Assembly (NCBI GenBank): GCA_039096225.1
Contig: JBBPEB010000002.1
Location: forward strand, 248,001-312,000
DNA: 64,000 bases
Reading direction: 5' to 3'
Source: Blastocystis sp. Blastoise
Lineage: Eukaryota; Protista; Bigyra: Opalinata
Shown here: in pieces, positions 11,927 to 34,080 of the stretch
Layout: each line of letters opens with the position of its first letter
Numbering within the stretch: the stretch's first letter is position 1
Program-made: the position numbers and the translations under genes
The notes under the pieces: generated by a model
The model's database searches: none
Told to the model about the DNA's origin: nothing
What the model saw: only the letters and a program-made list of their open reading frames with translations

Positions 11927-14619
11927 TTATTTCTTTAATAAGTCTGCCAGTTGCTTAAGGTCTTCTTTTGTTGTTGTTTTCTCTGGTGTGTCATTTGATG
12001 TCATTTCAAAATGTGGCATAGCCTCTTTTGACTATAGAATAAGTATATGTAGAATAATAAGTTGAATAATAAGTATAAAACTAAGTATAATAACAATAAT
12101 AAGTAGGATAACTATAATAAGTAGAATAACTATAATAAGTTGAATAAATATATATATATACAATCATAAAGGGTTTTTCTTGAAAATAAGGATGTTGAAG
12201 TGCTTCTTCCGCGGTTATTCTTTGTTTTGGATCCCACGCTAATAATTTTAGTAATAAATCCATTCCTTGTTCTGATAAATATACAGGTGAAGCAATAGCA
12301 ATAGCAGGTAATACAGTTCGTAAGTTACTTCTCACATTTTTCACTTTATTTAATTCATTATTCCAACAAGTATTCTTAAAACCATCATATTCAGGCTATA
12401 CATATATAATACATAATATATAATACATAATATATAATATATAATATAATTATATATATATATACAGGTGGATAGCCAATTTGTTTAATAATTTTAATAA
12501 GTGCTTCCATTTCTCCGTTTCCCTGTTTTAGAGACACAAATGGAGTTCGAGTTAATAACTCATAAAATATACATCCTACACTCCACATATCTAATTTATC
12601 ATCATATAAAACTTTAGATTCCCGCGGGTTTACTAGTAATTCAGGTGCTCTATATCCGAGTGACACGACCTGCTGCGTATATAACTCGAGGGGATCCGAA
12701 TAAATACGCGCCAAACCTAATGGAGGGAAATACACAATAATAAATGAATAAATAATAATAATAGTAGTATTATTATATATATATATATATACCAAAATCA
12801 CAAATAGAGAGTTGACCATTATTATATAATAAATTACTCAATTTTAAATCTCTATAGATTTATGAATAAATAAATAATAATAATAATAATATATATATAC
12901 CTATGTATAATCCATTTAGAATGCATATATTCCACTCCTTGTAATAATTGATATAATAAGCATTTCACTTCTGATTGGCTGAAAGGCACCTGCATCTTCG
13001 TGAACATGACTTTGACCATATCAAGTGGCAGATATTCCATGACCATATACGTCGTCATTGGGGGATGAGGGTCTATCACCATCTCTTTCACGGGAATTAT
13101 ATTGGGATGATGCAATGATAATAATACTATATATATATATATATATATCTAGAGTAATTTATATATATAATAGTATATCTACAGATATAGAGATAGAGAG
13201 AAATATATATATATATAATAGTATATATATACAATTCACTTCTCGAAGTGCTGTAATGGGAAAACCAGAAGCAGATGTTGTCGATGGATTTATTTTAATC
13301 TTTTTAAGAGCGACAATTTCTTGTGTGATATTATTCTTTGCTTTGTATACAACGCCATACGTACCCTCTCCTAACCTCTGAATCTTGGAATATACACTTA
13401 TATTACGACATCCCTATATATATACATACATAGATAATATCTATATATATATATATACATACATCTGGATTTATTGGTTCTATTATTTTAGGTGCTATAT
13501 ATATAATGATATTATTATTAAATAGAGTATCATATTATTATATATAGAATACATTCAATAATAGGTGAAACAATCTTTTCTTCTTCTTCTTCTTTTTCTT
13601 CTTCTTGTGTATTTATATCCATTTTATTTATAGAAATAGTATTTGAGGGATCTTGAGGAGTCAGAGACACAGATGGAGACACAGATTTTGGAGATACTCT
13701 CTATATTCATTATATATATATATATATATTATTATGATTACCTTTTGAAAGGATATCTCTTCTTGATCTTCTTCTTCTATATATATATATATAATCATAT
13801 AATTATTATTATATATTAACTATATATATATATACCATCATCACTCATCCATCGAGGAGTCTTCTTCTTTCCATCCTCTATATACATATACATATATATA
13901 TATATATATATATACCTAAAGGAGTACAAGGTGAAACACTATTATTATTATTATTATTATTATTTGTGCATATATTTGGTGACACACTGTTCGTCACATC
14001 TTCATCAGAAGACCAAACATGTGATTTCGTTAACTATATATATATATAATATCAATAATATTCATCTTATAATATATACACTCTTTTCATTTACTTCTTT
14101 TTGATTCTGTTTTTCTATATAAAAAAAAATAAGAATATATATATATATATATAAATATCACTTACCTGTTTCTTGTTTTTCTTTTAACGAAAGTGCCTTC
14201 TTCTTTAAATTCTCTAATACCTATTCAATATATAATTATATATAACTATAGAGTATAATCTAAAATACAGAGTTCTTTTTAACTGGAGGTAATTTTGATT
14301 TTGATTCTTCTTTATAGGACTGATGATCCTCTCTATGTGGTCTAGAAGATCTAGATGATCTAGAATCTCTGCGATCATCAACATCATAGGAATGAAGACC
14401 ATAACGATCTGAAGGAGAACGAGATCGTCCACGATCACCATAATATCGACCTTTTTCTTCATATTTATTCAATTTTGAAATCGATTTATCTTTTGAATTA
14501 TCAAAGTCAAAATCATAGATTCTTTCATTCATCCTATCTCTGTTTCTGTGTGATGAACGATATGGTTTTTGATCTTCGTAAGATGGTGAATGCGATAAAC
14601 TACGATTTCTTGAACTCAT
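11927..14619 (-). CDS. CDK11: CDK11/CDK10-type cyclin-dependent kinase with N-terminal RS/RD-rich region
   Basis: 14 exons in frame; GCRN, LGEGTYGVVY, VALKK, GFPITALRE (PITSLRE-like), HRDLKLSNLL, DFGLAR, YRAPE. Confidence 0.85.
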
Positions 14620-14995
14620 CTCTCAACTTTTCTCTTTATAATGAGTATAAATAAATGTAAAAGAAAACCAAATGAAGAAGTTCGAAACACTTTTTGTTTT
14701 GATTTTCTTAAAAATTTTAAAGATTTGCTAGTTCTATAATAAGTAATTAAGTCATTATAAAAAATGTAGAAATAAAAACATGGATTCACACTAGTATATG
14801 TTTATGAAATATAAGGATAACAATCTGTTTGTAATCGAATGAAGAAGAATGTTACTGTAATATTGCATATTTTTCAATAGAATCATTTAATTATGTAGAT
14901 GATATTATGGTGTAATTGAAGAAAGTATTTCATAAAGTATTGATGGATTCTAGATATGAAATGACTGTAAACACTATGGACATTTTTTCAGGTTT

Positions 14996-15204
14996 CTGTC
15001 AAAAGGTCCAACGACTTTTTTGTTTTGGTTTCCCCAGTGGTGAGCAGTGAAAATTTTTAAATATGTAGCTGACAAAAGGTTATTTGATTTTTCTGTTTGG
15101 TTTCCCCAGTGGTGGAGCAGTGAAAAAATTTTAAAGGGTAGCTGACAAAAGGTCCAACGACTTTTTTGCTTTGGTTTCCCCAGTGGTGAGCAGTGAAATT
15201 TTTT
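14996..15204 (+). repeat. Three 73-bp subterminal tandem repeats (core TTTGGTTTCCCCAGTGGTG(G)AGCAGTGAAA)
   Basis: Units start at 14996, 15069 and 15142 (CTGWCAAAAGGT...), directly inside the left TIR. Confidence 0.9.
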
Positions 15205-15492
15205 GTCAGAGTTTCAGTGATTTTATAAAATCGAAAAGCAGTGCAAAAGTATGACGCACCTTAAAACAATAATTGGCGAATAAAAATGGTTTTAAATATT
15301 CTCTATTTTTTCATTTATTGGTTTTTTTATTCTTTTTGTGGTGTAATAATAAACGATATAACAAAACAAACAAATTAAATATTATCAAATAATCATAAAA
15401 ACAAATAATAGAAAACAATAATAATAAATATATAAAAAAAAGATAATAAAACATATAATAAATAATATAATAAAATATATATAATATTTAAT

Positions 15493-15989
15493 TTATAATA
15501 TTTCAACCAGGACAGTTTCAGTCTTTAATTTGCATTTAAGCCTAAGCAACCTATATAAAGAGATGATATTAATTAACTAGTACTATTAGTAATATATATA
15601 ACATTTTAAAATAATAATAAAATAAAAATATATACCTTTTATTGAAGCCATTACTAGAAAAAGCAAGGACCAAAGGCAAGGAACCATCCTATAAAAGATA
15701 TATTAAATAGTATAAGTAATAAAAAGGAATATAATTAATATATATACATACCTTTGATAAGCCATTCTCTCCAATTAACAACAACGACAGCAACGGAACC
15801 CCCGGAAACCTATATAAAGATAGAGTAAGTTATATAATATAATAATATATAATAAAGTAAATTAATATAGAATAATAAAATATAAATATATACATTACTG
15901 CTATATAAATATAAAGTGGGGTTAGTTATATAATATGTAATAGATAATATAGATGATATATACCTTCTTTTAACATTGATTCCTTCCAT
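15493..15989 (-). CDS. Small spliced ORF of unknown function (64 aa) inside the CACTA-type element
   Basis: Comparatively GC-rich exons 15989-15964, 15809-15752, 15688-15636, 15550-15493 bounded by host-type GTAT..TATAG introns; frame stays open: MEGINVKRRFPGVPLLSLLLIGENGLSKDGSLPLVLAFSSNGFNKRLLRLKCKLKTETVLVEIL*. Could instead be non-coding. Confidence 0.4.
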
Positions 15990-17999
15990 TCTAGACCTAA
16001 AGAACCCATCTATAAGAGAGCCACGACCACACAAAAGAAGGACCAGAACGTTTAAGGAGACCAGCAAGTGTCAAAACACCAAGCAGAGACAGCTACAATA
16101 GAAAAATGAATGAATAGAGTAGAAAAAATAAAATATAAAGAAACAGCAAACACCTACCATCATAATAGTATCATATATAATAAAATAAAAATAAAATTTA
16201 ATAATATATCATATTAATCATATAAGATATAATAAAATAAATATGTGATAAGTCATGTAGCATTTTGTTTTGTTATAAAAGGGTGTAATAGGAATTTAGA
16301 AGATATAGCTGAAATAATGAAAATAAACATGAATAATCTCATATCTACTAAATATAGAGAATCTTCATCATAAGAAAAATGAATGGTTAAGAATAAAAGA
16401 GAAAGAAAAATTTTATTTCTATGAGGAAAATGGATATTGTTATTGTTATTTTCAATTTATCATAATTATCATAAGTAATACAAAAATTGTTTTATTTTAA
16501 AGAATTATATAGTTATTTATCATTATATCATTTTATAATCAGTTTTGACTATGGAAGAGTGATTTTTATCCTTAATTGTCAAAATTATTTTTAGTATCAC
16601 TCAGTAAGTATAAGTCTTTTAAAAAATAAATATAGGTTACAATACAGACTTATAGAGAAGACTCTGAAACTTCTATTTCCAGAATAAAAGTCATTTATAT
16701 AATCCAGAATGATTGCCTGAATCATTATTTAAAGAATCAGTTTTATCACATATCTTCAATAAAATTATAAAATAAAGAAAATGAAGATAAAAAGGTCTAG
16801 AGTCGAAAATGTTATGAAATATTATCTTTTTAATGTATTTGTCCCGATTTTTTATTAATCTGTTATCATAATATGACAAAGAGAGTGGTAAAAACATTTT
16901 AAAAGTGAATTAAAGCAATAATTGGAATCAAGTTAAAGTCTTCTAATACCTTTAAATAGACTTGAAATACATAGAGTAAGCATTTTTTCATGCAAATAGT
17001 GTTTTTCATTTAAATAATATCAAAAACAAATCAAAATAGTATTTTATAATTACTCAGCAAGAACTTTTTCTAGTATTCAAGGACTTACTATTATCAAATA
17101 TACGTATAAACAAACAAAAATCATATTTTATATATTTTTAGTTGAATAGTCGGAGTCGTGTTGATAGTTTATTATAAAACAAATGCAAAAATCACTTTTT
17201 TGTCAAAAAAAGTCTTATATCGATATATAGTTTTATTCATAATTTATTTATTGTCTACAAACTCTGTGTATTCATTTTAAGTGATTTTTAGTAAAACTAA
17301 AATTATTTGAAATATATTCTAATTTCGAAAATGACAAAAACATATTATATTACATATTTAGTGTTTAAATGAAGTTTAAAAGTTATTAAAATATCAATTA
17401 GTTAAAAAATATAAAATATTGAGAATCTCCATTTTTATGACTTGTCTTAAATCACGTTAAAGGTGTATAATTGAATAGTTGCATTGATTATTTGTATGAT
17501 TCTAGTAATATTTTCTAAGAATTTTGTTTTTTAACAAGAATAAATTCTTAATTTATTGTTTATCAACTTAAAAATGTATTTAAATGATTATTTTCTTGTG
17601 TAAAAGGGTATAGTGGTTATATGAAAAAAAAATTACGCAGAATCATTTGATAATATAATTTTGAAAATGAGAATTATTATTTTGAACTAAACTAATTTTT
17701 CACATATACTCATTATAAAACGACTTGAATAATCTTTTGAGAAGATTATTTTGTTTTATAATACACTTAAGAAGTAATTGAATGTTATTGTGTCTCTTTT
17801 TGTTAAAAAGATTATTTTGAATGCTATTTTTGATTGATCTATATATTATCAATGCATTCAATGATGAAATAAATACATATGTAAAGAAAAAATAGTAATT
17901 GATCTAATTTATCTTCATCTATTTGAATAGATAATTTTTGAAAAAATTAATATAATATAATTATTGATACCTATATATAAAGAATTAGTTATGTAATTG

Positions 18000-18068
18000 A
18001 CCTTAAGACAGGAATTGAACCTGTTTTCTATCATAAACTGATAGATACTTACCAATATAAGCTTAAGG
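18000..18068 (-). ncRNA. Non-canonical tRNA-like cloverleaf (nominal anticodon TTT)
   Basis: CCTTAAG CT TAT ATTGGTAA GTA T CTATC AGTTTAT GATAG AAA ACAGG TTCAATT CCTGT CTTAAGG T: 7-bp acceptor, 3-bp D, 5-bp anticodon and 5-bp T stems all pair; GG in D loop and TTCAA T loop; lacks U8 and U33; 3-nt variable loop. Confidence 0.75.
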
Positions 18069-19810
18069 ATAATATAGAATAAAAATACATAAATGAAAGT
18101 AAAATAGTAGGAATAATGAGTCAGTATGATGTGTAAGGATATATTTATATATGTATAAGTGAAAAAGGATGCTAGAAGAAGGGAAAAGAAGTAAAAAAGA
18201 ATAAAAGAGAAAGAAATATAAAGTAAATGAGATAGGGTCTTTAATTATTGAGATTAATAAAAAAAATGAAAAATAATTTATAATAAATGACAAAGATAGA
18301 TATATAGAGATCTATAATAATAAGGAATGCAGAAGAGAAGAGGATTAGAGGATAAAGAATAAGAAGAAGATAAGGAAGATAAGGAAGAAGATAAGGAAGA
18401 TAAGGAAGAATAAGAAGAAGATAAGGAAGAAGATAAGGAAGATAAGGAAGAATAAGAAGAAGATAAGGAAGAATAAGAAGAAGAAAAGAAGAATAGGAAG
18501 AAGATAAGGAAGATAAGGAAGAAGAAGAAAAGAAGAATAGGAAGAAGATAAGGAAGAAGAAGAAGAATAGGAAGAAGAATAAGAAGATAAGGAAGAATAA
18601 GAAGAATAAGAAGATAAGGAAGATAAGGAAGAAGAAGAAGAAGATAAGGAAGAAGAAGAAAAGAAGAATAGGAAGAAGAAAAAGAAAAGAAGAATAGGAA
18701 GAAGATAAGGAAGAAGAAGAAGAATAGGAAGAAGAATAAGAAGATAAGGAAGATAAGGAAGAATAAGAAGAAGATAAGGAAGAAGAAGAAAAGAAGAATA
18801 GGAAGAAGATAAGGAAGAAGAAGAAGAATAGGAAGAAGAATAAGAAGATAAGGAAGATAAGGAAGAATAAGAAGAAGGAAATGAATAATGACAACAAGAA
18901 GATGAAGAATAAATAGAATAATGATAAGAAAGAATAAATAGATTAATAAGAGAACAAGAGGATGAATGTGAAGAAGAGACAAGGAAGGAGGTGAAAAAAA
19001 GAAAGAAAAGTAAGATAAAGAATAGGAAGAAGATATACAAGAAAATGAAGAAGAAGAGAAAGAAAAGAAAAGAAGAATAAACAAGAAACATATATAGAGA
19101 AACAGAAAGATATAAAGAAATAAAAGAGATAGATAGATAGATAGATAGATAGAGAGAAAAAAAATACAAAGATATAAATAGATAGATACACTAATAGATG
19201 AATAGAAAGAAAGAAGAAAAGAGAGACATAAAGAAGAAATTAGATAGAAAGAGATAGAATTCTATATAGAATGAGAGATATACAAAAGAAATCAAATGAA
19301 ATAGAGAATAAGATAAAAATAGATACAAGAATAAAGATAAAAAGAGAAATAGAGGAGTAGGGAAGGTGTATAAAAAAGAAAGAATATAAAGATAGGTAGA
19401 GAGGAATTGAGAAGGATAGAGAAGGAGGAGGAAAACAGATAGAATTGGAAGACGAAGAAAAGAAGATGAGACGAAGAAGGGAGAAAAAAGGAGCAGGAAG
19501 TGAATATCAAGAAAGATAAATTTATATAGAAAAAAATTAGAAAGAAAAATACATACAAAGAAAACGATAGGGAATGATAGAGAGAATTATAATTTGAATG
19601 ACATAGAGAGAAGGAGAGACAAAGCAAGATAAAGAAGTATAATAGAAAAAACAAAGAAGAAAAAAAGAAGAATAAAAAAAGAAAAGATAGAACAATAGTA
19701 TATGAGAGAAGAAAGAGACAGAAAGAAAACGGGAAATAGGGTAGAGACATAGAAGGTAATAAAATATATAGAAGGGGAGAGGGGATTGAGATAAATAAAT
19801 AGATAGATAT

Positions 19811-19879
<69 letters not shown>

Positions 19880-22530
19880 GATAGAAGAATACCGAAAGAT
19901 ATAGAGAAGGAGATAAATATTAATAAAAAGGAAAATATGGATAGAGAGGAGATAGAATCAAACAGAGAAGGAGAAGTAGATAAAAGTCGATTGAGGGAAG
20001 AGAGAAGTAGATTAAAATAAAAACAAATAGCAAGAGTTAAAAGGAAGAAGGGAAGAATATAGAATGATTTGAAGAATGAGATGTATATAGAAGTGAATAG
20101 AAGGAAATAGAGAAGGAGAAGTAGATAGAAAAGATTAAAAATAGAAGGAGATAGAAAGATAAGAGAATGATATAGATACAATAGAATGAGATAGAGAAGA
20201 TAAAGTAGATAGAAATGGATAGAAATAAGAAAAATAAATAGGATAAGAGAGAAAGAGAGATAAAAGGATATAAAAGGATATAGAAGGAGAGAAAACGGAT
20301 TGAGATGTAGTAAGATGGAAGGATGTAGATGGAAATAGAGAAGTAGATAGAAGATGATGGAGAATAAAGAGGAGATAGAAGAGGAGATAGAAGGAGAAAA
20401 AGAAGAAGAGGAAGTAAATTAAGTTAGAAGGAGATATAATAAGATAGAGAAGTAGATATACGTAGATATAAGGAAATATACGAAGATATAAGTAGATAAG
20501 AGAAAATAGAAGGAAATAGAGAATGAGATTGAGACACATAAATGAGGTAGAATGAGATAGATAAGGATAGAGAAATATGAAGAGAAATATAGGAATACAG
20601 AGAGATAGAATGATGTTGAAAGAGAAAGAAAAGGAAAGACTGAAGATTGAGACAGAAGGAGTAGCTGAGATAAAAGGAAGATAGAGAAGGAAATTGAAAG
20701 ATGAAGGAAGAAGGAGAGAAGATGAAAGAAGAAGAATATAGAAGAAGATAGAGAATGAGATAATAGGGATAGAAAGAGAAAAATAGGAAAAAAGATGGTT
20801 AGAAGAAAATAGAAAAGGAGAAAGAAGGAGAGATAGAAGGAGAAATAGAAGGATATAAAAGAGATTAAGAAAGAAGTTAGAGACAAGAAGATATAGATAT
20901 ATAGAAAGAAATAAAAGGATTAAATAGAAGATTAATAGGAAATAAATAGGAGACATATAGAAGATTAAGATAGAAGAAAAGAGACAAAATAGAAGTAGAT
21001 ATAACAATATAGAGAATGAAAGGATAGAAATAAAAATAGAAAATAGATAACTAGAACATAAGAATATATAATAATAGAGAGAAGGAGAGAGAGAAGAAAA
21101 AGTAGATATAAAGTGGAAAAGGAGACATAGAAGGAAATATAAAAGGAAACAAGAAGGTAGAAAGAGACATATAAGATAAAATAGACAGGGACAGAGAGAA
21201 ATAAATGGAAAAAGAATAAGGATAAAGATGGATACGAGAATAGAGAGGGAGAGAAGGAAGATTGAGATAGAATTATACAGAAAGAGGAGAGAAGGAAGAT
21301 AAAGAAGGAAAATAGGGCAGTAAAAAAAAGGGAATCAGAAGGAGGAGAGAAGAAGTATGAGAAGAATAGAAAGAAGGAAGAGGAGGAAGGCAAATAATAG
21401 AAGAGAACTATATATATAATAAATAGTGATATAAATATAAATAAGAAGATGAAGATCTGAAAAAAGCAAAGAATTATATGGAGAAGAAGAAGAAGAAGAG
21501 GAAGAGGAAGAAAAGGAGGGTATACACTAATACATGTCGAGGAAAAAGAAGTATAGAATAAGGAGAAGAGGATAACAGGATAAAAGAAAAAGACATAACG
21601 AAATACAATGTAAATAGAATAGTGATTAAGAAAGAGTAATGAAAGAGTGATATAAAAGGGAAGCGAAGATAAGAGAGAGGTATAATTAAAAAAAAGAAAA
21701 ATAAAGGAATTTAGATAGAAGAAAAAATAAAAGAAAAATGAAGATCTGAGGAAGATAATGAATCAAAGGGAGAGACAAGGATATAGGCTGGAGACAAGGC
21801 ATAGGAAGAAGTAATAAAGAAAGAAGATGAAGAAATAAGGAGATAAAAGTGTAGAAGGAAGAAAATGAAGAAGAGAGAAGAAGGAATCATTTTGTGTAAG
21901 AAGAAGAAATAAAGAAGAACTAGATAATAAATAAATAAATAAATAAATAAATAAACATACCTAATAGAAAAAAAATGAATTTGGTGATGTTGAGTCATAG
22001 GGAAAGATAACCAACAGAAACAGTAGAAAACAACCTAAATAAATAAATAATAATAAATAAAAATATAAAAATAATGAAAATAAATAATAAAATGAATTAG
22101 ATTCTAATTTAAGAAAAAACAAAAAGAAAGCTAATAATAGATAGAATGAATATACGATAAGTACTCTATTATATAATACTTAAAAATATAACAAAGAAAA
22201 AAATTAGAGATAATTATAAAAATAAATAAATACATATATACTTTGAAAGTAGTTTGACATCATAGACGTTGTTGACATGGACTGAAGAGGACTCTTATAA
22301 CCATGGACGAGCAGGAACCTATACATGCTAGAGAATGGGAGAATGTTAATATTGATAAAGAATAAAAAATAGTAATATACATACAAGAGAATAATCTGAA
22401 GTTAAAATCAACTTCTATTTTTTAAAATAACAGCTAATAAAAATAAAATAAAAATAAAGAAAATAAGTAACAAATGAAAATATTTTCTAAGTTAATAGGC
22501 TCAATAGCGTATGGGTGTATTCAGGTCTTA
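18069..22530 (-). ncRNA. Putative spliced pyrimidine-rich long non-coding transcript
   Basis: Minus-strand GT-AG bounded exons 22433-22385, 22318-22242, 22034-21961; acceptors at 21920 and 21408; no continuous ORF through the 5' exons; leads into a ~3.7 kb T/C-rich, G-poor tract. No expression data. Confidence 0.4.
18240..21920 (+). repeat. ~3.7 kb polypurine (+) / polypyrimidine (-) low-complexity tract, including a GAA/GAT/AAG/TAA/TAG triplet minisatellite (~18350-18880) and (GATA)n (~19127-19152, ~19800-19878)
   Basis: Plus strand almost lacks C; repeats visible directly. Confidence 0.95.
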
Positions 22531-23039
22531 AAAGAAAAATCATTTTTGCGGGAATATCAAGAAACTCAAAAAAAGTATTTTTTCCCTCCTTTTTTCACTG
22601 TCACTTTTCTTTAATATTTTTGACTTTTTAGTATTAAAAACGATTCTTACAGGCATGTATAGAGACTCTATACCACTTTTGAGACTAAAAATCAAATATT
22701 TAAAAATGAGTGAAAAATCTTGACTAGCAAGAAAAACAATTATGTGAAGCTGAGTATGTTGTGTATACACATATCTAACAACAGAGATGATAAAAACACA
22801 CAACTCCTCTTGGTTTAGGACATAATTATGAATTCTCTCAAAAAAGCTATTTTAAACCTTAAAACGATACCCTGAACTATAAATCAAGTCCTGAATGATA
22901 TTCTAAAGTCATATTTTTAAAAACAGGTTTAATGACGATAATCAATAAACAAAAACAAGAGCTTCCGTTTTACTTTTCTTTTTTGAATTTTTAATTGTTT
23001 TGACTTTCTAGGGTAGTTGGCTGAAAGAAATGTTGTCGT

Positions 23040-23513
23040 CTTTAGGCTAAAAAATGATGAATAAAAAAGTCAAGTCATTTTATTGTTTTTTCCTTGGGAA
23101 ATAAAAAAGAAGAAATTTTTAGGTGTGTTTTGGTTTAGGCTGTATAATGGTTTTTATTGTAAAAGGACTTGACGAGAATGATTGAAATGATAATACATCA
23201 CTCAGAGAACACACAACTTTAAAAAATTTGTCACTCATGTAATCCATTCCTGAATTATAGACTTCAGAGAAAAAATTAAAGTCTTTTTGGTTTTAAACAG
23301 TCATTTTAAATCATAAAACACTGTAAAATAGTCAATATTTAGAATGTCTATGATTATATAAATAAACAATATATTTTGTAGAGTTATTTTTAAGTTTTTC
23401 TCGTCAAAAAGAGAGAAACTTGACAAGTTGGCGGACACTCTTTTCTCGAGTTTAGGCCAACGTATTTTTGATTAAAAAATCCCAGTCATTTTGTTGTTTC
23501 TCTTACGGGAAAT
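23040..23513 (+). repeat. Two diverged ~63-bp direct repeats near the right TIR (TTTAGGC...AGTCATTTT..TTGTTT...GGGAAATA)
   Basis: Copies at about 23040-23103 and 23450-23513; shorter TTGGTTTAGG copies near 22810 and 23130. Confidence 0.7.
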
Positions 23514-23941
23514 AGGGTCAAAAAAACACAAAATGTCCATAGTGAATGTTTTTTTATATAACGAAACGGTTCAAATAGGATTCTTATTCAATCAGTATTT
23601 CTTAAAATATGTGGATAAATTAATATAAATTATACTATATAAGTAATTATGATGAAAATCGATATAAATAGATTGTTTTTATCTCATTATTATAATTTAA
23701 CCATATTATTAAGAAAAAGACAAAAAATAGAAAAAGATAAAAATAATTATAATCTCTATATGCCTGCATTAGTTTATATTTCATATAAAACAATATCAAT
23801 AAATATTTTATTATAAGTAATGTTATAATGGTTAATATAATGAAAACAAAACAAAATAATAATCAAAACAACCAAGATTCAATATATATATATATATATA
23901 TATATGAATAGAACAAAAGAAATAGTTAATATTTATTTATA

Positions 23942-24927
23942 CTAATGATGTCTATGAGACTCATGTGTATTATGATTATGATTATGATGTTCACTTTGAT
24001 GTTCATATCTGTTACTATTATTACTCTTATTATTAGTATTATGATGATGATGATGATGATCTTGACTTCGACTTCGAGTTCTTCGATTATGTGAATAATC
24101 ATTATATTTATCTTCTTTCTCTATATTTTTAGATTTTGAATGTGAATGGCCTTTTGAAACAGATTGTTCTCTTTGAGAATGATGTGATTTCCTAAGAGAA
24201 GAAGAAGAAGAAGGAGAAGGAGAAGGAGATTGTTCTTTAGTTTTAGTATTTAATGAATTATCTGAATGTACAGAAGTATTGGATTGTTCTTCAAGTCTCT
24301 TAAGACTATATATATATTATTATTAATTAATTATAATCATATTAAATATATAGTGATTAAAAATAGAGAACTAATAAATTAATTAATTAATATTTTATAC
24401 AATTCTCTATTATTTCCATAAGAAATATATTCTTGAAAAAAATTTTTGATTTTTGCTTGATTATTTAATAAAATAACATTTGATTTATGTACTGTTATCA
24501 TTTTATTTAAATCATTTATATTTATCTATAAAGTATAATCAATATTATTATCATAAAATAAGATAAATTATACATATATATACAGTAATATCCCCATTAA
24601 TTCTCATCATTTTTATACTAATAATACTACCCATAAAACCTGTATGCATATATAATATATATATAATATATATATAATATATATATACCTGTATACTGTC
24701 CATGAGTAATACCTATATCTGCTCCATCTCTTAAAATATTACTATTTTTAAGTTCTTTCTCATCTATTACTTGTGCTCCTAAACCAGAACGAAATGGAAT
24801 AGGTTTTAATTGAACAGGTTCAATTTTCTGTGGTTTTCGTCCAATAAATCCGTCATCTTTATATCCCATCCCGCGTAATAAGGCCGCGCCAAAATCTTCA
24901 ACTGGCATATCAGTATAAGAACGACTC

Positions 24928-24982
<55 letters not shown>

Positions 24983-25787
24983 TTGGATCAGGGGCATCTG
25001 GTTTCGATTCTATTTCTTCTAATACTTGTTCTTTAGTATTCTATATATATAAATATATATATATATCAACAACTATATAAATACAAATAATAATTATATA
25101 CATATAATTATACATAATGACTATATATATAACATAAATAACTTACACTTTTCTCTTGATTCTCTTTAATTGTTTGAAATATTTGAGAAACTTCTTCTTT
25201 TCCTTCTCCTATCAAAGCGTTTTCCACGGGAATAACCAATTTGCTATCATGATCTTCTTTTTGAACAGCATCTATATACACATATATTTATTACTACTAC
25301 TTTATAGTATTTCTTCGATATTTTTTTAATTTTATATATTTCAGTATATATATTTATATTAAAATTCATTATAATAACTAATATACCTGGATTCACACTT
25401 TTTAAAATAGCTTGACGCGCTAATTCTTCTACTGACTAAACATAATTATACAAATTAATATAATTAGCACATGAAAATTACCAATTCTTTTGATTGAGTT
25501 TGTTTTGATTCAGGTTGTGATTCTTTTTGTGATTCTATTTCGGTAACTGATTGTGATTGTTCTTGTTTCTTTTCCTTTGCTTGCTTTATTTGATCAGATA
25601 CAGACCATGTGTCTCCCTTAAACGAAATAACAAGTTTAACTTGTGGAATTTCAATGGGTTTATTAATATCTTCAATAGATGATATAAATTGTTTCTTTTC
25701 TGTAGCCACTGTTTGCTTCACCCCAAAGATGGACAAACCTTGCTTTGGTTTCACAACTGCCTTAGAGGAATTTAAAGAGAAATTCAT
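23942..25787 (-). CDS. G-patch + KOW splicing factor (Spp2/MOS2/GPKOW-like) with Ser/His/Arg-rich tail
   Basis: 8 exons in frame; G-patch_2 signature YTDMPVEDFGAALLRGMGY...RSGLGA; KOW-like IGITHGQYTGFMGSI; TAG at 23942-23944. Confidence 0.85.
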
Positions 25788-25865
25788 TATTCTACAAAAA
25801 GAAACAAAACGAAAATCAAACAATTACACGAAAAGAGATTTTTGAAATTTTTTTTCATAACGTAG

Positions 25866-27161
25866 TAGAGATTTACAAAAAACCGTATATGAATATATCA
25901 CCGGTTTTTTTTTGAGAAAACCGTATATACGGTTTTTTATTGTACTTATATGTCTTTTAATGTTGATATTTTTTTGTTTATTAATTATGTATATTCATAA
26001 GAATTATAGTTGTAATAGAAAGAAACTTAGAAAAAAAAGAAACAGTTCCATTTGTTGACATTGTTCACAAAGTATCTTCGAATTTATTGTTTACTATATT
26101 ATGATAATGTTAATTATGTTATGTATATATGTAAAAACTAATATTGTTGAAATACTCATGATATAAGTACTATTTTATAAGCAATTAATTATTTAATTTG
26201 ATATTTTTTATACTATAATATTTCTCCTTTACTATAAATGCTATTTAATACACAATAAACTAATATAATCAACATTTGATGAGCTTTAAAAAACTACATA
26301 TTCTGTGAAATGTTTTTAATATCTTTCAGATTAATGTGCTCTATCATGTCAACATCTTCATAAATAATTACATATCATAAATTATAACTGATATTACATT
26401 TTCACTAATTGTACATTGATTCTATTTTTATTTGACTCATTAATAGTAGTAATGATTCATTTATACTTTATATCTCTCTATATAAATATTTCATGCTTTT
26501 AATATAGCTATAACTAGTATTTAAGAGAATAAAAAACATCATTCATTTTATGATAGATAAATTTCAATGAAATTATAATAATATTATAAAATACATTGAG
26601 AAGTGATGATATATATCATATTATGTAATTATTTATAATATAGAGTCAAATATAGCCGATAATGTAAAAAAATGTTATAGTCACGGATTCATTGTATTTC
26701 CAAAAGAAGTTACTTCATTTTATATTGATAAACGCAGATTAGAGTATTGAATAAGAACAATTAACTGATTCAATCAAAATGGACAAAAAGTGATTACTAT
26801 CAATAGAGTTTAATCTACCCATAACTTGCTTGAGATTATCAGAAACAGTTATTATATGTTTGTAATATGACTAGATTAAGCTTAAATCTCTTTATTGTCT
26901 ATATAATCTAATTAATAATAAAATATTTCTAAAAGAATATCAAGAAATAACTTAAATATATGAATAAGCCTGATATAACACTTATAAAACAAAAAACAAT
27001 TTTAAAAAATTAATATTTGACTTTATATAAGTAAAATAAAATTCATATACGGTTTTAAAACCGAATATGGAATTTTGACTGAGAAATGAAAAAACCGTAT
27101 ATACGGTTTTCTCAAAAAAAAAGCGGTGATATATTCATATACGGTTTTTTGTAAATCTCTA
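25866..27161. mobile_element. Non-autonomous hAT-like DNA transposon, 1296 bp
   Basis: 73-bp TIRs (25866-25938, 27089-27161) with one mismatch, starting TAGAGATTTAC; 8-bp TSD TAACGTAG (25858-25865, 27162-27169); no internal ORF of 60 aa or more. Confidence 0.92.
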
Positions 27162-28213
27162 TAACGTAGTAGAAAAATGAAAATAGTCGTGAAATTATTT
27201 ACTATTTATATTTTCCTATATATCTCTCCATAAATGAATTATAAATATGTAAAATGTGTTATATTGTGATGAACATAATATAAATATGTTCATAAGAAAA
27301 AATTAATGATTGTAATATGTATTGTACTGATTTACTCGTTATTCTTAATATGCATTGCATTTATATAATTATTTTTGTGCTAAATGAGTTTAGTAATAAT
27401 AGAAACATATTATAGCCTAATGTAAGCTTCTTTAATTTAACAGTTATTGGACAAGTCTGAATTCAGTCTCAATATTATTCGATAATTATAATACTCTAAT
27501 GTTGTAAATGCTAATATATTACTTTTTATATAAAAAAATAAGTGATTAATATGTTTTCGATCATTTTGTGTAAGTAATGAATCACTTTAAAAGCCATGTT
27601 ATATGTCTCAATAAATATATATATGCTTTATTAAATATAGAAAAAGTGATTTAGTAACAAAAGTCATTACTTTGTTGAAATATGTCAATTTTTTTAAATA
27701 ATTCCTTTGTTACTAATATTTCTTTTTGTGATATTCACATTATTTTCTAAGAAAACTATCAACGTGTTTCTGCAAAGAAATACCCCAATTTAATTTCTAA
27801 AAAAATAATTATATTCATTAAAAGACTTGTTTTTTGCATAATTACGAGTGTATAAGTATTTTTTAGATCTTTACAATAAATATATAGAAAAATTACTGAT
27901 AAGAAAGCAATAATTAGTCCATTCATAGGAAAACAAGATATTTATGTTATAAAAATCATTTTCATTAGTACTTGTGTGTCTCTAATACTTGTATATGAAC
28001 TTAAATTAATCATATATGTAATAATAACGTTAAAATAAAATAAAAATAATTTCCATATACTTTTACGGTTTTTCCCCAAAAAACACTCATAAACTACATT
28101 TTTCATCAAGAAAAACTCTTTATGGAAGTTACTCGTCATTTATCTGATGCATTCTTTTCTGTTTTATTTCATTGATATATATTTTTTTAATTAAAAAGAA
28201 TATTATATTGAAG

Positions 28214-29993
28214 ATGGTATCTGATTTGGGTGATATAAGAAAAAATATTGTTCATTTTGAACAACTGATTGGTGATTTACTTGGAATCTTAAGTACTTCA
28301 ATAAGTTTTTGTGTCCATTCGAGTGATTCTATAAGTGATCTTTTAATGTATTATGTTAATAATAATGCGGATAGCAAGAATAAATCCAAAAATGTGATTC
28401 AAGAGCCATCTTTTCTTCAAAAACCACATGAAGAAATAAGCAATGATAATAATGATGTTGATTATATTCGATTTACAAGTAAAGGCCCAATTTATTGTCT
28501 TCCTAAGAGAATTATAAACAATTTAGTTGGAAGTTTTATTTTAGAACAGTGTGAAGAAGATCAAAGAACTACTGATGGTACTGTATATTTAGATTATCCA
28601 TATGATGAGACTATGGCTCCTTTATTAATTGATTCCTTGATGAATAAGAGTATTGATTTAAGTAAATATGAATATAAAGATAAATATGAGTTATTACGAT
28701 TATTTGAATATTGTGGGCTTCCTCTTCCTGAAGAATTAGTATATACTTTTAATCGAAGTGAAACGAAGTGTGTAAAATGTAAAGAAGGTGATAAAATATA
28801 CTTATATATTAATGGAATAGAAGATGAAAGTATATGTAGATATTTAATGAATAATAATTTATGGGATAATTATGTGATGAATTATAATAATGGATTTGTT
28901 AATTATTATCATATGACTGAAAATTTATATATAGATAAGAAATATAAATATATTAACTATATATATCAATATATTTTTAATAAATATATATTTATTTCTT
29001 CTAATGATATTATATCAATAAATCAAGAATTGTTCGAGAATGAAATGTATGATGTATTTGGAGATAATGGAAGAAATATTGCAAAAGAAGGATTGACACG
29101 AGTTGAATGCTTTTTAGAAACAACAATTATTAGTAACAGATGGATGGAGAAATATATTATAGATTGGATAGGTACAGAAAAGAAATGGAAATTATTATTT
29201 AGGTATTTCTATATAATTCATTTAATATATTTATTTATTATATTATTATATATAGAGCAAGTGAACATGAATATTCTACAAGTGAATTCCATAAATATTG
29301 TGATAATATAGGAGAAAAGATTCTTATCGTGAAGAATATAGATCAAAATAATAATGTTAATATATTTGGAGGATATGCATATGAGAATAGGTCTAATCAA
29401 CAACAAAATAATTGTATATACTTTTATTTTGTTTAATATAATATATAATTTCTTATTATATAGATATTGGTTTTCATAATAATACTAACTTTTTGTTTAC
29501 ATTCAATAATGAAATTGCAAATTATGCTTGTAAATATCCTTGTACAAATAGTAGGTTACGTAATACTTCATTAAATCAATTTGGAACTTTTCATAATAGT
29601 AATATAACTACATTCAATTCATTTGGATCTTTGCCTAATAGTAATACAGTCACTTCAAGTCCATTTGAATTTGCTTTTAAAGATTATATTTATATTTCAG
29701 ATCAATGTCATAATAATAAAGATTCTTATTGTAGTAAGACATTATGTAGATATATTAATAATGAGAATAACTTTGTACTTAAACCAGCAACTAGATATAG
29801 AAAACCAGCTATAGATATAAAAGATAATCTTGGTATATATGGACTTTCACAAATAAATAAAGGATTAGGAAATAATGTAAATTCTGGATTTGGAAATAAT
29901 AAAGCTATTGGATTTGGAGTAATACAACCACAACTTTCTGATTCAATTGTTAATTTCACAGTTGAAGATTATGAAGTATGGGGTATTGCCTAA
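28214..29993 (+). CDS. TLDc-domain protein with N-terminal BTB/T1-like repeats
   Basis: 3 exons; WKLLFRASEH...FHKYCDN...NIFGGY...FLFTF...FTVEDYEVWG; N-terminal DGTVYLDY; clear paralogue of 30700-32273. Confidence 0.85.
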
Positions 29994-30699: not shown

Positions 30700-32273
30700 T
30701 TATGCTCTTCCCCAGACTTCATAATCTTCTACTGTAAAATAATTTTTAGAATCAGGATTACCAGTATTCACAAATAATGAATGTTTTTGAGGAGTATTTA
30801 CTTCAGAATAAGAATATGCCTTACAATACGATTCTTTTTCTTTATTATTATTATTATATATTCTGATATCACTACCATATCCAAATGTTGGACCATACGA
30901 AGAACCACAATGTATACCAAATCTATTATCACTATCAGTATAATCATATTTAGTAGGAGGAGTACCATGTTCATTACTTAAGGTAAATAGATATTCTTTA
31001 GAATGAGATTTCCACTCTATATAAATGATAATGAATAATTATATACAATAAATCTACTACCTGAACCAGCCCAACTTTGATCTGTGTATCCTCCAAATAT
31101 ATTCATATGATTATTATGACCTTTATGTTTGATTATAGTTACTGTTTCTCCTTTATTATCACAACATCTATGAAATTCACTTACTTTATAATTATGTTCA
31201 CTTGCTCTATATATATAACTATATAATATAATAAAATATATATATATATACCTATATAATAATTTCCATTTCTTTTCTTTACCAAGCCAATTCACTAAAG
31301 AGACTTCAGCTGTTTGATCAACTATATATGAATGTGGAAATGAAAAATTAATATTCCATCCATTCTTTACGCTATTTCTTCCTTTATTACCAAATAAACT
31401 ATACATTTCATTCTCTAATAATTCTTTATTTATAGTCTTAGTTTCTTCTTTAGAAATGTAAATATGATTAGTCTTTATATATTCATAAATATAATCAATA
31501 TATGTATAATTCATCTTCAAATACATTTCATTATTCTTTTCGTCATAATCTACATATCTAAAACCATATTCATTAATAATCTTATTCCATAATCCATTCT
31601 TCTTCCAATAATTTCTTAATAGTTCATCTTTCTCATCATTTATATAAAGAATAACATCATCACCTTCTTTATATTGTATCATATTTTGATCTCTTTGATA
31701 ATGAACTGTCGTTAATTCTTCAGGAATAGGTAATTCACAATATTCAAATAAATCTAATAATTCAAGTTGATCTTTAAAATCTAATTGATCAACATTAATT
31801 TTTTTATTCATTAAAGAATCAATTAATAAAGGAAAAAGTGTTTCATCACCACAATAATCTAAATAAATATCACCATAAATATTCCTTTTATTTTCTTGAG
31901 AATTTTCATAGATAAAACTACCTACTAAACTATTTGTTATTCTTTTAGGAAGAGAATAAACTAGGCCATTATTAGTGAATCGAATATAATCAATTCCATT
32001 ATCATTATTATTCATAGTAGCATCATTTTCATGAACATAAGAAGATTCTTTGATAATTATTTGTGGATCATCACCATTCTTATCATTCATTGCTTCACAA
32101 TTTCTTACAGATTGTTTTACTAATTCATTTATAGATTCACCTGAATGAATACAGAAACTTATTGACTTACTTAAAATACCAATCAAATCACCAATCAGTC
32201 TTTCAAAATGAATTACATCCTTCTGAATATCACCAATCTTATCAGCATCAAATCCTACCTTCTCTTTCACCAT
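30700..32273 (-). CDS. TLDc-domain protein with N-terminal BTB/T1-like repeats (paralogue)
   Basis: 3 exons; WKLLYRASEH...FHRCCDNKGETVTIIK...NIFGGYT...YGPTFG...FTVEDYEVWGRA*; same intron positions as its neighbour. Confidence 0.88.
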
Positions 32274-34080
32274 TCTAAACAATAAAAGAAATAAAAGAAT
32301 AATGAAAACTCTTTTAAAAATTCTTTTTCTATCCTATATAGAGAAATTTGTTTCTCTAATTCAAAAACCTAGTTAAATAACTCTATTGTGAAATATATTC
32401 TTTTATAGCGTAAAATAAATAATAATCGTAAATATTCATTAAAACGACTTTTTCATAAATTCACGGTTATTCTTGATTTACTGACTTTTATTTAAGAATT
32501 AATCGTGATCTAAATCCATTTTTTATTCATTTTTTTAATTCCCTTATTATTCATTTAATTTATATTTTAAATGATAATTATTCCATTAAATTATTTCATA
32601 ACAATGTAATCTATAAGAATATTGTTAGAATAAACTAAAATAATCAACTGATTGTCATTCTTTCTTCAATTAGCTATTGTAGAAAATCTATCCTTCTTTT
32701 ATTATCAATCAAGATGTTCTAAGTATTATAAGTTAATATTTGCTTCTTCTAAATACCTTCATTTATTCACATTTTGGTTTGTAATCTTCTTTATATGGTT
32801 TATTTGAATATCAATCACTGTATATCATTACTCCAATAATCATAAATCACATGAATCACTAATTTAAATCAAGATTATAGTATTTCTTTTGATAATCATT
32901 CCAATGATATCATAAATTTGGTATCTTTATATATTTTTTATATCCGAAATATAATTATCTATCTATTTAATATTAATTTATTTCCTAATATTTCATTATC
33001 CTTCTAGTTTTTTTTTAAGAATCATTTCTTCTTATTATATTTTCTAAGAATTCTCCACATATAATATTTTATACTCCTTATAATCACTAAGAAAATCAGT
33101 CAATTATCTCCTTATAAACAGCTATCATCTACTGTTTTATATTATTTTCACAATCCTTCATACTCAATGATATTTAACTTATTTTTATTATCATCATAAT
33201 TTATCAAATAGGATTAATTCATACCATATGCTATTTCATTTTCTTATTCATAAATATCAATGAAATAATAAATAATATTATATTGTTTAATATATAAATA
33301 AATCTAATTCAGATATTCACTGCTCACATAACATTTTTATATCCATTTTTATCAATAAAAACTATTTATTGATATATAAATTATATTTCTTTTATTCAGT
33401 AATTACCAAAAAAAAATATATAATTCTATTCGATTTAATACAATACTATTAACATATTTATCATATTCATTGCTATTCTATCTAATTAAATATATGTTAA
33501 TAACTATTATCTAGGCAATTACTATGAATAAAAAAAATCAATACTCTTTATTTAAACAACACATCTTCTCTATTTTTATATCACTTACTTTATAACCAGT
33601 TTTATGAAACCTTAAACACAATTTATATAAATAAATTAAAAAAACTATATAATAAAAATTTCATAAATAATAATCATTTTTAATTCTTTCTGTATAATAA
33701 GAAAAGGAGTCACAAGATAATCGTCTTTTCTTTTAATACTTCATATATACCAAACAATTACAAAAATTGATACTTATCATACTTTATGATATTATTGTAA
33801 TAAAAAAATATTTAGAAATACTTATTATTGTAAAAGAATATGAATAGACACAATATATTAATTAATTTATAACATACAATAATAATACAATGTTAAAAAT
33901 GTTATATACTTAAAATAATAATATAAATATATAATTTTCATCATTATTTTATTATTTTCAATTCTATAATATTTTTTATTATATATATAATTAATAAAAA
34001 CTTAAATAAATATAAAAAACGAAAGAAGAATAGAAAATATATATAGTAATTCATAAAAATAGATATAAATACAATTTTTA

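What the first reader, a model, noticed from the sequence alone, without database searches (positions are those of the whole stretch)
14972..23544. Transposase-less CACTA-ended element whose cargo looks like an RNA system: spliced polypyrimidine lncRNA followed by a tRNA-like cloverleaf
Seen: 15-bp perfect TIRs with subterminal repeat arrays enclose 8.6 kb with no transposase. On the minus strand, in order, are a GCGGGAA site (22548), three short exons with host-type splice sites but no continuous ORF, ~3.7 kb of U/C-rich almost G-free sequence, a fully paired tRNA-like fold (18068-18000), and a second set of spliced exons (16092-15493). Established: MALAT1 and NEAT1 lncRNAs get their 3' ends by RNase P cleavage at a non-canonical tRNA-like element (mascRNA/menRNA). 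Inference: this may be a mobile or domesticated lncRNA cassette with tRNA-like 3' processing. I know of no such arrangement in a DNA transposon or in a protist.
Basis: partly seen in the sequence, partly recalled or inferred. Interest (0 to 1): 0.9.

Follow-up and report, generated by a model that had tools for sequence, protein, structure and literature searches.

The report
Transposon-borne tRNA mimic in a protist
A jumping DNA element of a gut protist carries a small RNA fold that copies the shape of a tRNA but cannot read the genetic code; about 300 copies ride in three unrelated transposon classes, which suggests that these transposons borrow the cell's tRNA-cutting enzymes, a trick known mainly from two vertebrate long RNAs.

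Summary
The anatomy is confirmed. The element is a recently mobile non-autonomous CACTA transposon: about 30 copies, two subfamilies, 3-bp (here 2-bp) target duplications, an empty paralogous site, and a transposase-encoding relative with the same ends. The host is probably tortoise Blastocystis Rus-B. The cloverleaf is a real structured RNA: 26 versions keep 98% of pairs, with double-sided changes in all four stems. It lacks the tRNA 8/9 linker as mascRNA does, keeps the GG/T-loop elbow, and has no fixed anticodon. It is not special to this element: about 300 copies lie in CACTA, MULE and Helitron elements. In four separate contexts it follows short spliced-looking exons and a G-poor tract. 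A PRORP-like RNase P gene is present. The MALAT1 triple helix is absent. Best reading: an RNase P/Z cut site that ends a Pol II non-coding transcript (0.42). Main rival: a stand-alone Pol III tRNA mimic (0.33). Other first readers of this scan noted the same motif on other DNA of this genome (unchecked notes, not independent support).

The parts
14972..14986 (+). Left TIR (CACTA type), preceded by 2-bp target duplication
14996..15198 (+). Left subterminal array, 73-bp unit x2.8, shared (86%) with the transposase element
15493..16092 (-). Unit 2: five predicted exons (16092-15964, 15900-15894 micro-exon, 15809-15752, 15688-15636, 15550-about 15493); skeleton kept in A, B, C and the transposase element; exons drift at the neutral rate
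   Evidence: splicing not shown
16158..16480 (-). Predicted first exon and promoter region of unit 2; 6.5% divergence A/B, also matched in family C
16481..17970 (.). AT-rich spacer, no reading frame kept, 19% divergence A/B
17970..17999 (-). Acceptor-like site 29 nt after the cloverleaf; similar site in B, C and two MULE versions
18000..18068 (-). Linker-less tRNA-like cloverleaf, 69 nt: 7-bp acceptor, 4-bp D stem with GG loop, 6-7-bp arm with free loop, 5-bp T stem, canonical T loop
18100..21919 (-). U/C-rich, G-poor low-complexity tract, 3.8 kb, no continuous frame
21961..22500 (-). Unit 1: three predicted short exons (to 22385; 22327/22319-22242; 22034-21961); start not known
   Evidence: splicing not shown
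22548..22554 (-). E2F-like site, kept in A, B and C, absent from the transposase element
23530..23544 (-). Right TIR; last 160 bp 90% like the transposase element

Best explanation
The element is a non-autonomous CACTA transposon moved in trans by a transposase such as the one in the 15.5-kb element on contig C23 (relatives, target duplications and empty site shown; the trans step inferred). Its cloverleaf belongs to a family of non-decoding tRNA mimics kept by selection on RNA structure and spread over CACTA, MULE and Helitron elements (shown). Most likely working (inferred): RNA polymerase II starts near the E2F-like site, makes a spliced non-coding RNA through the U/C tract, and the protein-only RNase P cuts at 18069/18068 and RNase Z after 18000. 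This ends the upstream RNA without a poly(A) tail, releases a 69-nt mascRNA-like RNA, and opens a free 5' end that stops the polymerase before unit 2. The likely gain for a DNA transposon is a portable transcription stop: it keeps internal and incoming host transcripts from running across the element, its ends and neighbouring genes, and so limits double-stranded RNA and harm to the host (this last step is speculation).
For: About 30 TIR-bounded copies, 3-bp duplications in 12 of 14 A copies, empty site, partner with Transposase_21 and DUF4218. 98.1% of cells paired, 12 of 22 pairs with double-sided change, 0 of 500 shuffles; slid controls 35-42%. Cloverleaf 7% divergent between A and B against 19-28% in flanks (P about 0.01). 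D-loop GG in 25 of 26, T arm almost invariant, nine different middle triplets: these are the features that RNase P reads and mascRNA keeps (PMC11693755, PMC4919922). Same strand and order, exons then G-poor tract then cloverleaf, in CACTA A/B/C, twice in a MULE, and in the long Helitron. PRORP-like gene with motifs in the right order (each piece below cut-off). In the window copy no T4 run follows within 50 nt, which fits Pol III poorly.
Against: No RNA data. No triple-helix motif to protect the cut 3' end. The Helitron 3'-end version has no exons or promoter in front, only a satellite. A T5 run starts within 16 nt downstream in 8 of 12 context groups, 2.0 expected (groups are related). One 6.5-kb U/C tract in the MULE has no cloverleaf behind it. 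A 4.4-kb copy without cloverleaf has intact ends and a target duplication, so the motif may not be needed for jumping. Low-complexity DNA is common in this genome (PMC12129017).
Confidence: 0.42

Rival explanations
1. The cloverleaf is a stand-alone Pol III gene (perfect B box, loose A box, T-run terminator). It gives a 69-nt tRNA mimic that acts in trans (decoy for tRNA-binding or defence proteins), or it binds TFIIIC/TFIIIB and acts as a chromatin barrier and Pol II roadblock. The exons and tracts are separate cargo.
For: B box intact in all versions; T5 run within 16 nt in 8 of 12 groups, 2.0 expected; exon-free placement in short Helitrons; 15 of 26 versions have at most one mismatch to a loose A box (no control); other readers note tRNA-derived Pol III-like units in another transposon of this genome (unchecked).
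Against: A-box positions change with their pairing partners, so the constraint is on fold, not on a DNA box; no T-run behind A, D2 and E1; four contexts place it right behind an exon-plus-tract unit on the same strand.
Confidence: 0.33
2. Tract and cloverleaf lie inside one large intron that ends at the acceptor at 17970; the cloverleaf is an intron-hosted small RNA, or a cut site that splits the intron, and units 1 and 2 form one spliced host transcript.
For: Acceptor-like site 29-48 nt downstream in A, B, C, D1, D1b (5 of 12; background about 6%); a branch-point-like motif in A; conserved introns with drifting exons in unit 2 resemble small-RNA host genes.
Against: 7 of 12 groups lack the site; the stretch between cloverleaf and acceptor is 23% divergent A/B; unit 2 has its own conserved upstream region.
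Confidence: 0.12
3. A dead tRNA relic that hitch-hikes in transposons that swap cargo; no present function.
For: Elements nest in and recombine with each other; young copies are alike anyway; a few versions have broken pairs.
Against: Double-sided changes in all four stems; loss of the linker is shared and stable; flanks are unrelated between groups.
Confidence: 0.07
4. A decoding or suppressor tRNA that lets the element read through stops in hidden genes.
For: Some versions show UUA or UCA in the loop centre.
Against: Nine different triplets; position 33 is a purine in the window copy; no frame with a synonymous excess under any stop reassignment; host uses the standard code.
Confidence: 0.02

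Closest known systems
mascRNA / menRNA of MALAT1 and NEAT1
   Same: tRNA-like cloverleaf with 7-bp acceptor joined directly to the D arm, GG in the D loop, canonical T arm, no decoding loop, placed behind a long non-coding stretch (PMC11693755).
   Different: No triple helix before it; upstream unit looks spliced; 69 nt with a longer D arm and 2-nt joints; about 300 copies in DNA transposons of a stramenopile instead of fixed vertebrate loci (PMC12941219 calls MALAT1 and NEAT1 the only lncRNAs matured this way).
t-elements of plant mitochondrial transcripts
   Same: tRNA-like fold used as a PRORP processing signal (PMC4919922).
   Different: Nuclear, mobile, multi-copy; cleavage not shown.
Pack-CACTA / non-autonomous En/Spm elements
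   Same: CACTA TIRs, subterminal repeats, 3-bp duplication, no transposase, intron-bearing cargo, partner elsewhere (PMC6379663).
   Different: Cargo matched no host gene outside the family; layout is kept across families under 70% alike; some copies have 2-bp duplications; carries a structured RNA.
tRNA-derived SINEs and Cassandra elements with 5S RNA (own knowledge)
   Same: A Pol III-type RNA module inside a mobile element.
   Different: Those are retroelements that need the module for their own transcription; here it rides in DNA transposons, has no tail or duplication of its own, and keeps full pairing.
Fanzor cargo (own knowledge)
   Same: One module shared by several DNA transposon superfamilies.
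   Different: No protein partner found; RNA only.

Membership tests
CACTA (En/Spm) non-autonomous element | Short TIRs starting CACTA | tested here: met
CACTA (En/Spm) non-autonomous element | 2-3-bp target site duplication | tested here: met
   3 bp in 12 of 14 A copies; 2 bp here, confirmed by empty site
CACTA (En/Spm) non-autonomous element | Transposase partner with the same ends | tested here: met
   C23:362896-378401, Transposase_21 and DUF4218; activity not tested
Pack-CACTA | Cargo captured from a host gene | tested here: inconclusive
   Exon sets matched only family members among the candidates scored
Canonical tRNA gene | Nucleotides 8/9, U33, purine 37, stable anticodon | tested here: not met
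MALAT1-like locus (mascRNA/menRNA) | Linker-less cloverleaf with D-loop GG and T-loop elbow | tested here: met
   PMC11693755
MALAT1-like locus (mascRNA/menRNA) | U-rich/A-rich triple-helix motif just upstream | tested here: not met
   Longest A run in the 60 nt upstream is 1-3 in all 12 groups
MALAT1-like locus (mascRNA/menRNA) | Pol II precursor cut by RNase P and RNase Z, CCA added | not testable with these tools
Pol III type 2 gene | B box | tested here: met
Pol III type 2 gene | A box and T-run terminator | tested here: inconclusive
   Loose A box; T-run in 8 of 12 groups but not in the window copy
tRNA-derived SINE | Own tail and target duplication, spread by retrotransposition | tested here: not met
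   All 20 sampled copies share long flanks with other transposon copies or lack a tail

The most novel reading that the evidence does not exclude
DNA transposons of three superfamilies in this protist share a portable RNA-only module, a mascRNA-type tRNA mimic, that recruits the host's RNase P/Z to cut and end polymerase II transcripts; it serves as a mobile terminator and lncRNA 3'-end former and shows that MALAT1-type processing arose apart from vertebrates and spreads by transposition.
Probability: 0.38. Interest if true: 0.9.

Novelty: new variant of a known kind. Interest (0 to 1): 0.8.

Why it matters
tRNA-machinery maturation of nuclear lncRNAs is known from very few vertebrate loci. 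A second, independent family with more than 25 natural versions gives a ready set for testing what RNase P and RNase Z need in a linker-less substrate. DNA transposons have no RNA step, so a structured RNA kept by selection in CACTA, MULE and Helitron elements at once points to an unknown pressure on transposons (silencing, read-through, chromatin). Either main reading would be a new kind of transposon cargo. No match was found in the papers searched, in Rfam, or in metagenome and viral contigs.

Tried and rejected
Hidden transposase or other code in the element: no frame shows a synonymous excess, with or without stop reassignment; host genes use the standard code. Protein in unit 2: a 73-codon frame over the predicted exons in A is broken in B; a start codon at the end of the upstream exon would open about 33 codons in both A and B, but changes are mostly non-synonymous and the exon has no Pfam match. 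The joined spliced model was not searched; exons were searched one by one by reference. TGTTTGTT near the end of unit 2 as a poly(A) signal: dropped, the motif is not enriched in tortoise isolates (PMC12129017). L070 as a long-TIR element: it is nested, inverted Helitrons. Cloverleaf in the transposase element: none. Rfam, ARAGORN: none. Pattern scans of metagenome and viral contigs: none (strict pattern). RNase P RNA: none, but the control rang nowhere.
Full report
Host. The assembly has 33.34 Mb in 34 contigs and about 23% GC. This fits Blastocystis sp. Rus-B from a Russian tortoise (33.3 Mb, 33 scaffolds, 23.1% GC; PMC12129017). The match rests on these figures only. Host genes use the standard code and introns of the GTATAT...ATAG type.

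The element. The 15-bp TIR occurs 66 times, in about 30 pairs. Fifteen full copies are 99-100% like the window; about twelve form a subfamily B of 8.8 kb, identical at the ends and over 19200-22100, and about 80% alike over 15500-19200. Twelve of 14 A copies have a 3-bp target duplication. The window copy has 2 bp, and an empty paralogous site at C5:808340 confirms this. No transposase lies inside; a 15.5-kb element on C23 shares both ends (86% and 90%), has its own 3-bp duplication and encodes Transposase_21 plus DUF4218. So this is a young non-autonomous CACTA family. That the C23 enzyme moves it is inference.

Layout is old. A third family, C (6.7 kb, other TIR, under 70% alike), has the same order of parts: E2F-like site, short exons, purine/pyrimidine tract, cloverleaf, AT-rich spacer, second exon set with a micro-exon. 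The second exon skeleton is also seen at the left end of the transposase element, which has no cloverleaf. Between A and B the unit-2 exons (20%) and spacer (19%) drift alike, while unit-2 introns (8%), its upstream region (6.5%) and the cloverleaf (7%) are held. No frame shows a coding pattern. I read both exon sets as non-coding. Exons were searched one by one; the joined model was left out of all searches.

The cloverleaf. It folds far better than shuffles. A model from six versions found at least 150 copies, the limit of the tool; the T arm occurs 306 times, control 0 (a few may be true tRNAs). On 26 distinct versions 98.1% of cells pair, 12 of 22 pairs have double-sided changes, in all four stems, and no shuffle reaches this (the alignment was fitted to the model, but free folding gave the same cloverleaf for most versions, and the unfitted alignment agrees). 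The acceptor joins the D stem with no 8/9 linker, the D loop ends in GG in 25 of 26, the T arm is nearly fixed, and the middle loop shows nine triplets. It is therefore not a decoding tRNA. The missing linker, the GG and the T arm are the features described for mascRNA and menRNA (PMC11693755).

Carriers. Besides CACTA, the motif sits twice in a MULE with a SWIM-finger transposase end and in Helitrons with 5' TC, 3' hairpin and CTAG. Earlier notes of this scan gave me the lead to look at these carriers; I checked them here. In CACTA, at both MULE sites and at the inner site of the long Helitron it follows short exon-like pieces and a G-poor tract on the same strand. At the Helitron 3' end it follows only an AT satellite and faces inward. 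One long tract in the MULE has no cloverleaf.

Mechanism. Shown: mobility, selection on RNA structure, loss of decoding features, spread over three superfamilies, a PRORP-like gene in the host (pieces are weak but in order). PRORP reads the tRNA body and the D-loop G and cuts t-elements (PMC4919922). Inferred: transcription, splicing, cleavage. I give 0.42 to a cis-acting RNase P/Z cut site that ends the upstream Pol II RNA and frees a 69-nt RNA. I give 0.33 to a stand-alone Pol III gene, because a T5 run follows within 16 nt in 8 of 12 context groups (2.0 expected), though not in the window copy. An intron-hosted reading gets 0.12 (acceptor-like site in 5 of 12). Both main readings would put a transcription barrier and a small tRNA mimic inside transposons. 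The MALAT1 triple helix is absent, so an upstream RNA cut here may be short-lived; the cut, not the lncRNA, may be the point.

RNA data. Three public runs were listed; one holds 64% of the words of 15300-18300 but may be DNA. Nothing was laid. Those places had been part of earlier queries; none of their letters were sent as a query afterwards. There is thus no expression evidence either way.

What is known. Pack-CACTA elements are known (PMC6379663). MALAT1 and NEAT1 are called the only lncRNAs matured by the tRNA machinery (PMC12941219). Searches for tRNA-like elements in CACTA, Helitron or Blastocystis found nothing relevant; the library lacks most subscription papers. Rfam has no such family, and a strict pattern found nothing in metagenome or viral contigs.

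Verdict. It is not a member of the MALAT1-like class (no triple helix) but may work like one. Novelty: new variant of a known kind. Interest 0.8, held down by the lack of any RNA evidence and by an open Pol III rival.

Noticed in passing
window 25850-27165: A 1.3-kb element with long imperfect inverted ends and no reading frame, probably another non-autonomous DNA transposon.
   Followed up: no
L039:1439-4011 (G000:C23): A piggyBac-like element (DDE_Tnp_1_7, intron-bearing) nested in the transposase-encoding CACTA element, in the place that matches the upstream region of unit 2; apparent 4-bp duplication.
   Followed up: partly
G000:C5:500192, C19:220920, C23:205345: Three identical-scoring copies of a second CACTA transposase (758-aa open frame). 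One family here shows both 2-bp and 3-bp duplications; two transposases might explain that.
   Followed up: no
L043:251-8916 (G000:C34): A-type body with different TIRs and left end; six such copies carry the A cloverleaf, four with one loop change.
   Followed up: partly
window 15500-19200 against L017: Subfamilies A and B are identical at both ends and over 19200-22100 but about 80% alike between: a recombinant mosaic. Unit-2 introns (8%) are more conserved than exons (20%).
   Followed up: partly
L076:1860-3130 (-): The long Helitron carries a gene of many short exons that begin with the same few codons; looks like a small secreted repeat protein.
   Followed up: no
L073:190-1990 (G000:C15:233800-235600): PRORP-like gene, about 13 kb before the window start; no RNase P RNA found.
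   Followed up: partly
L075:620-5001 (G000:C8): Tandem array of 779-bp Helitron-like units beside the MULE end.
   Followed up: no
window 43636, 44315, 52735, 59328, 60718: More GCGGGAA sites than composition predicts; probably a common host promoter motif.
   Followed up: no
window 12000-14620 and 23900-25820: The element sits between a G-patch-like gene and the promoter of a CDK11-like kinase gene, both on the same strand as the cloverleaf.
   Followed up: no
window 28172-29993 and 31017-32282: Two divergent paralogues of a BTB/TLDc-like family; a fragment of a related family lies between the Helitrons of L070.
   Followed up: no
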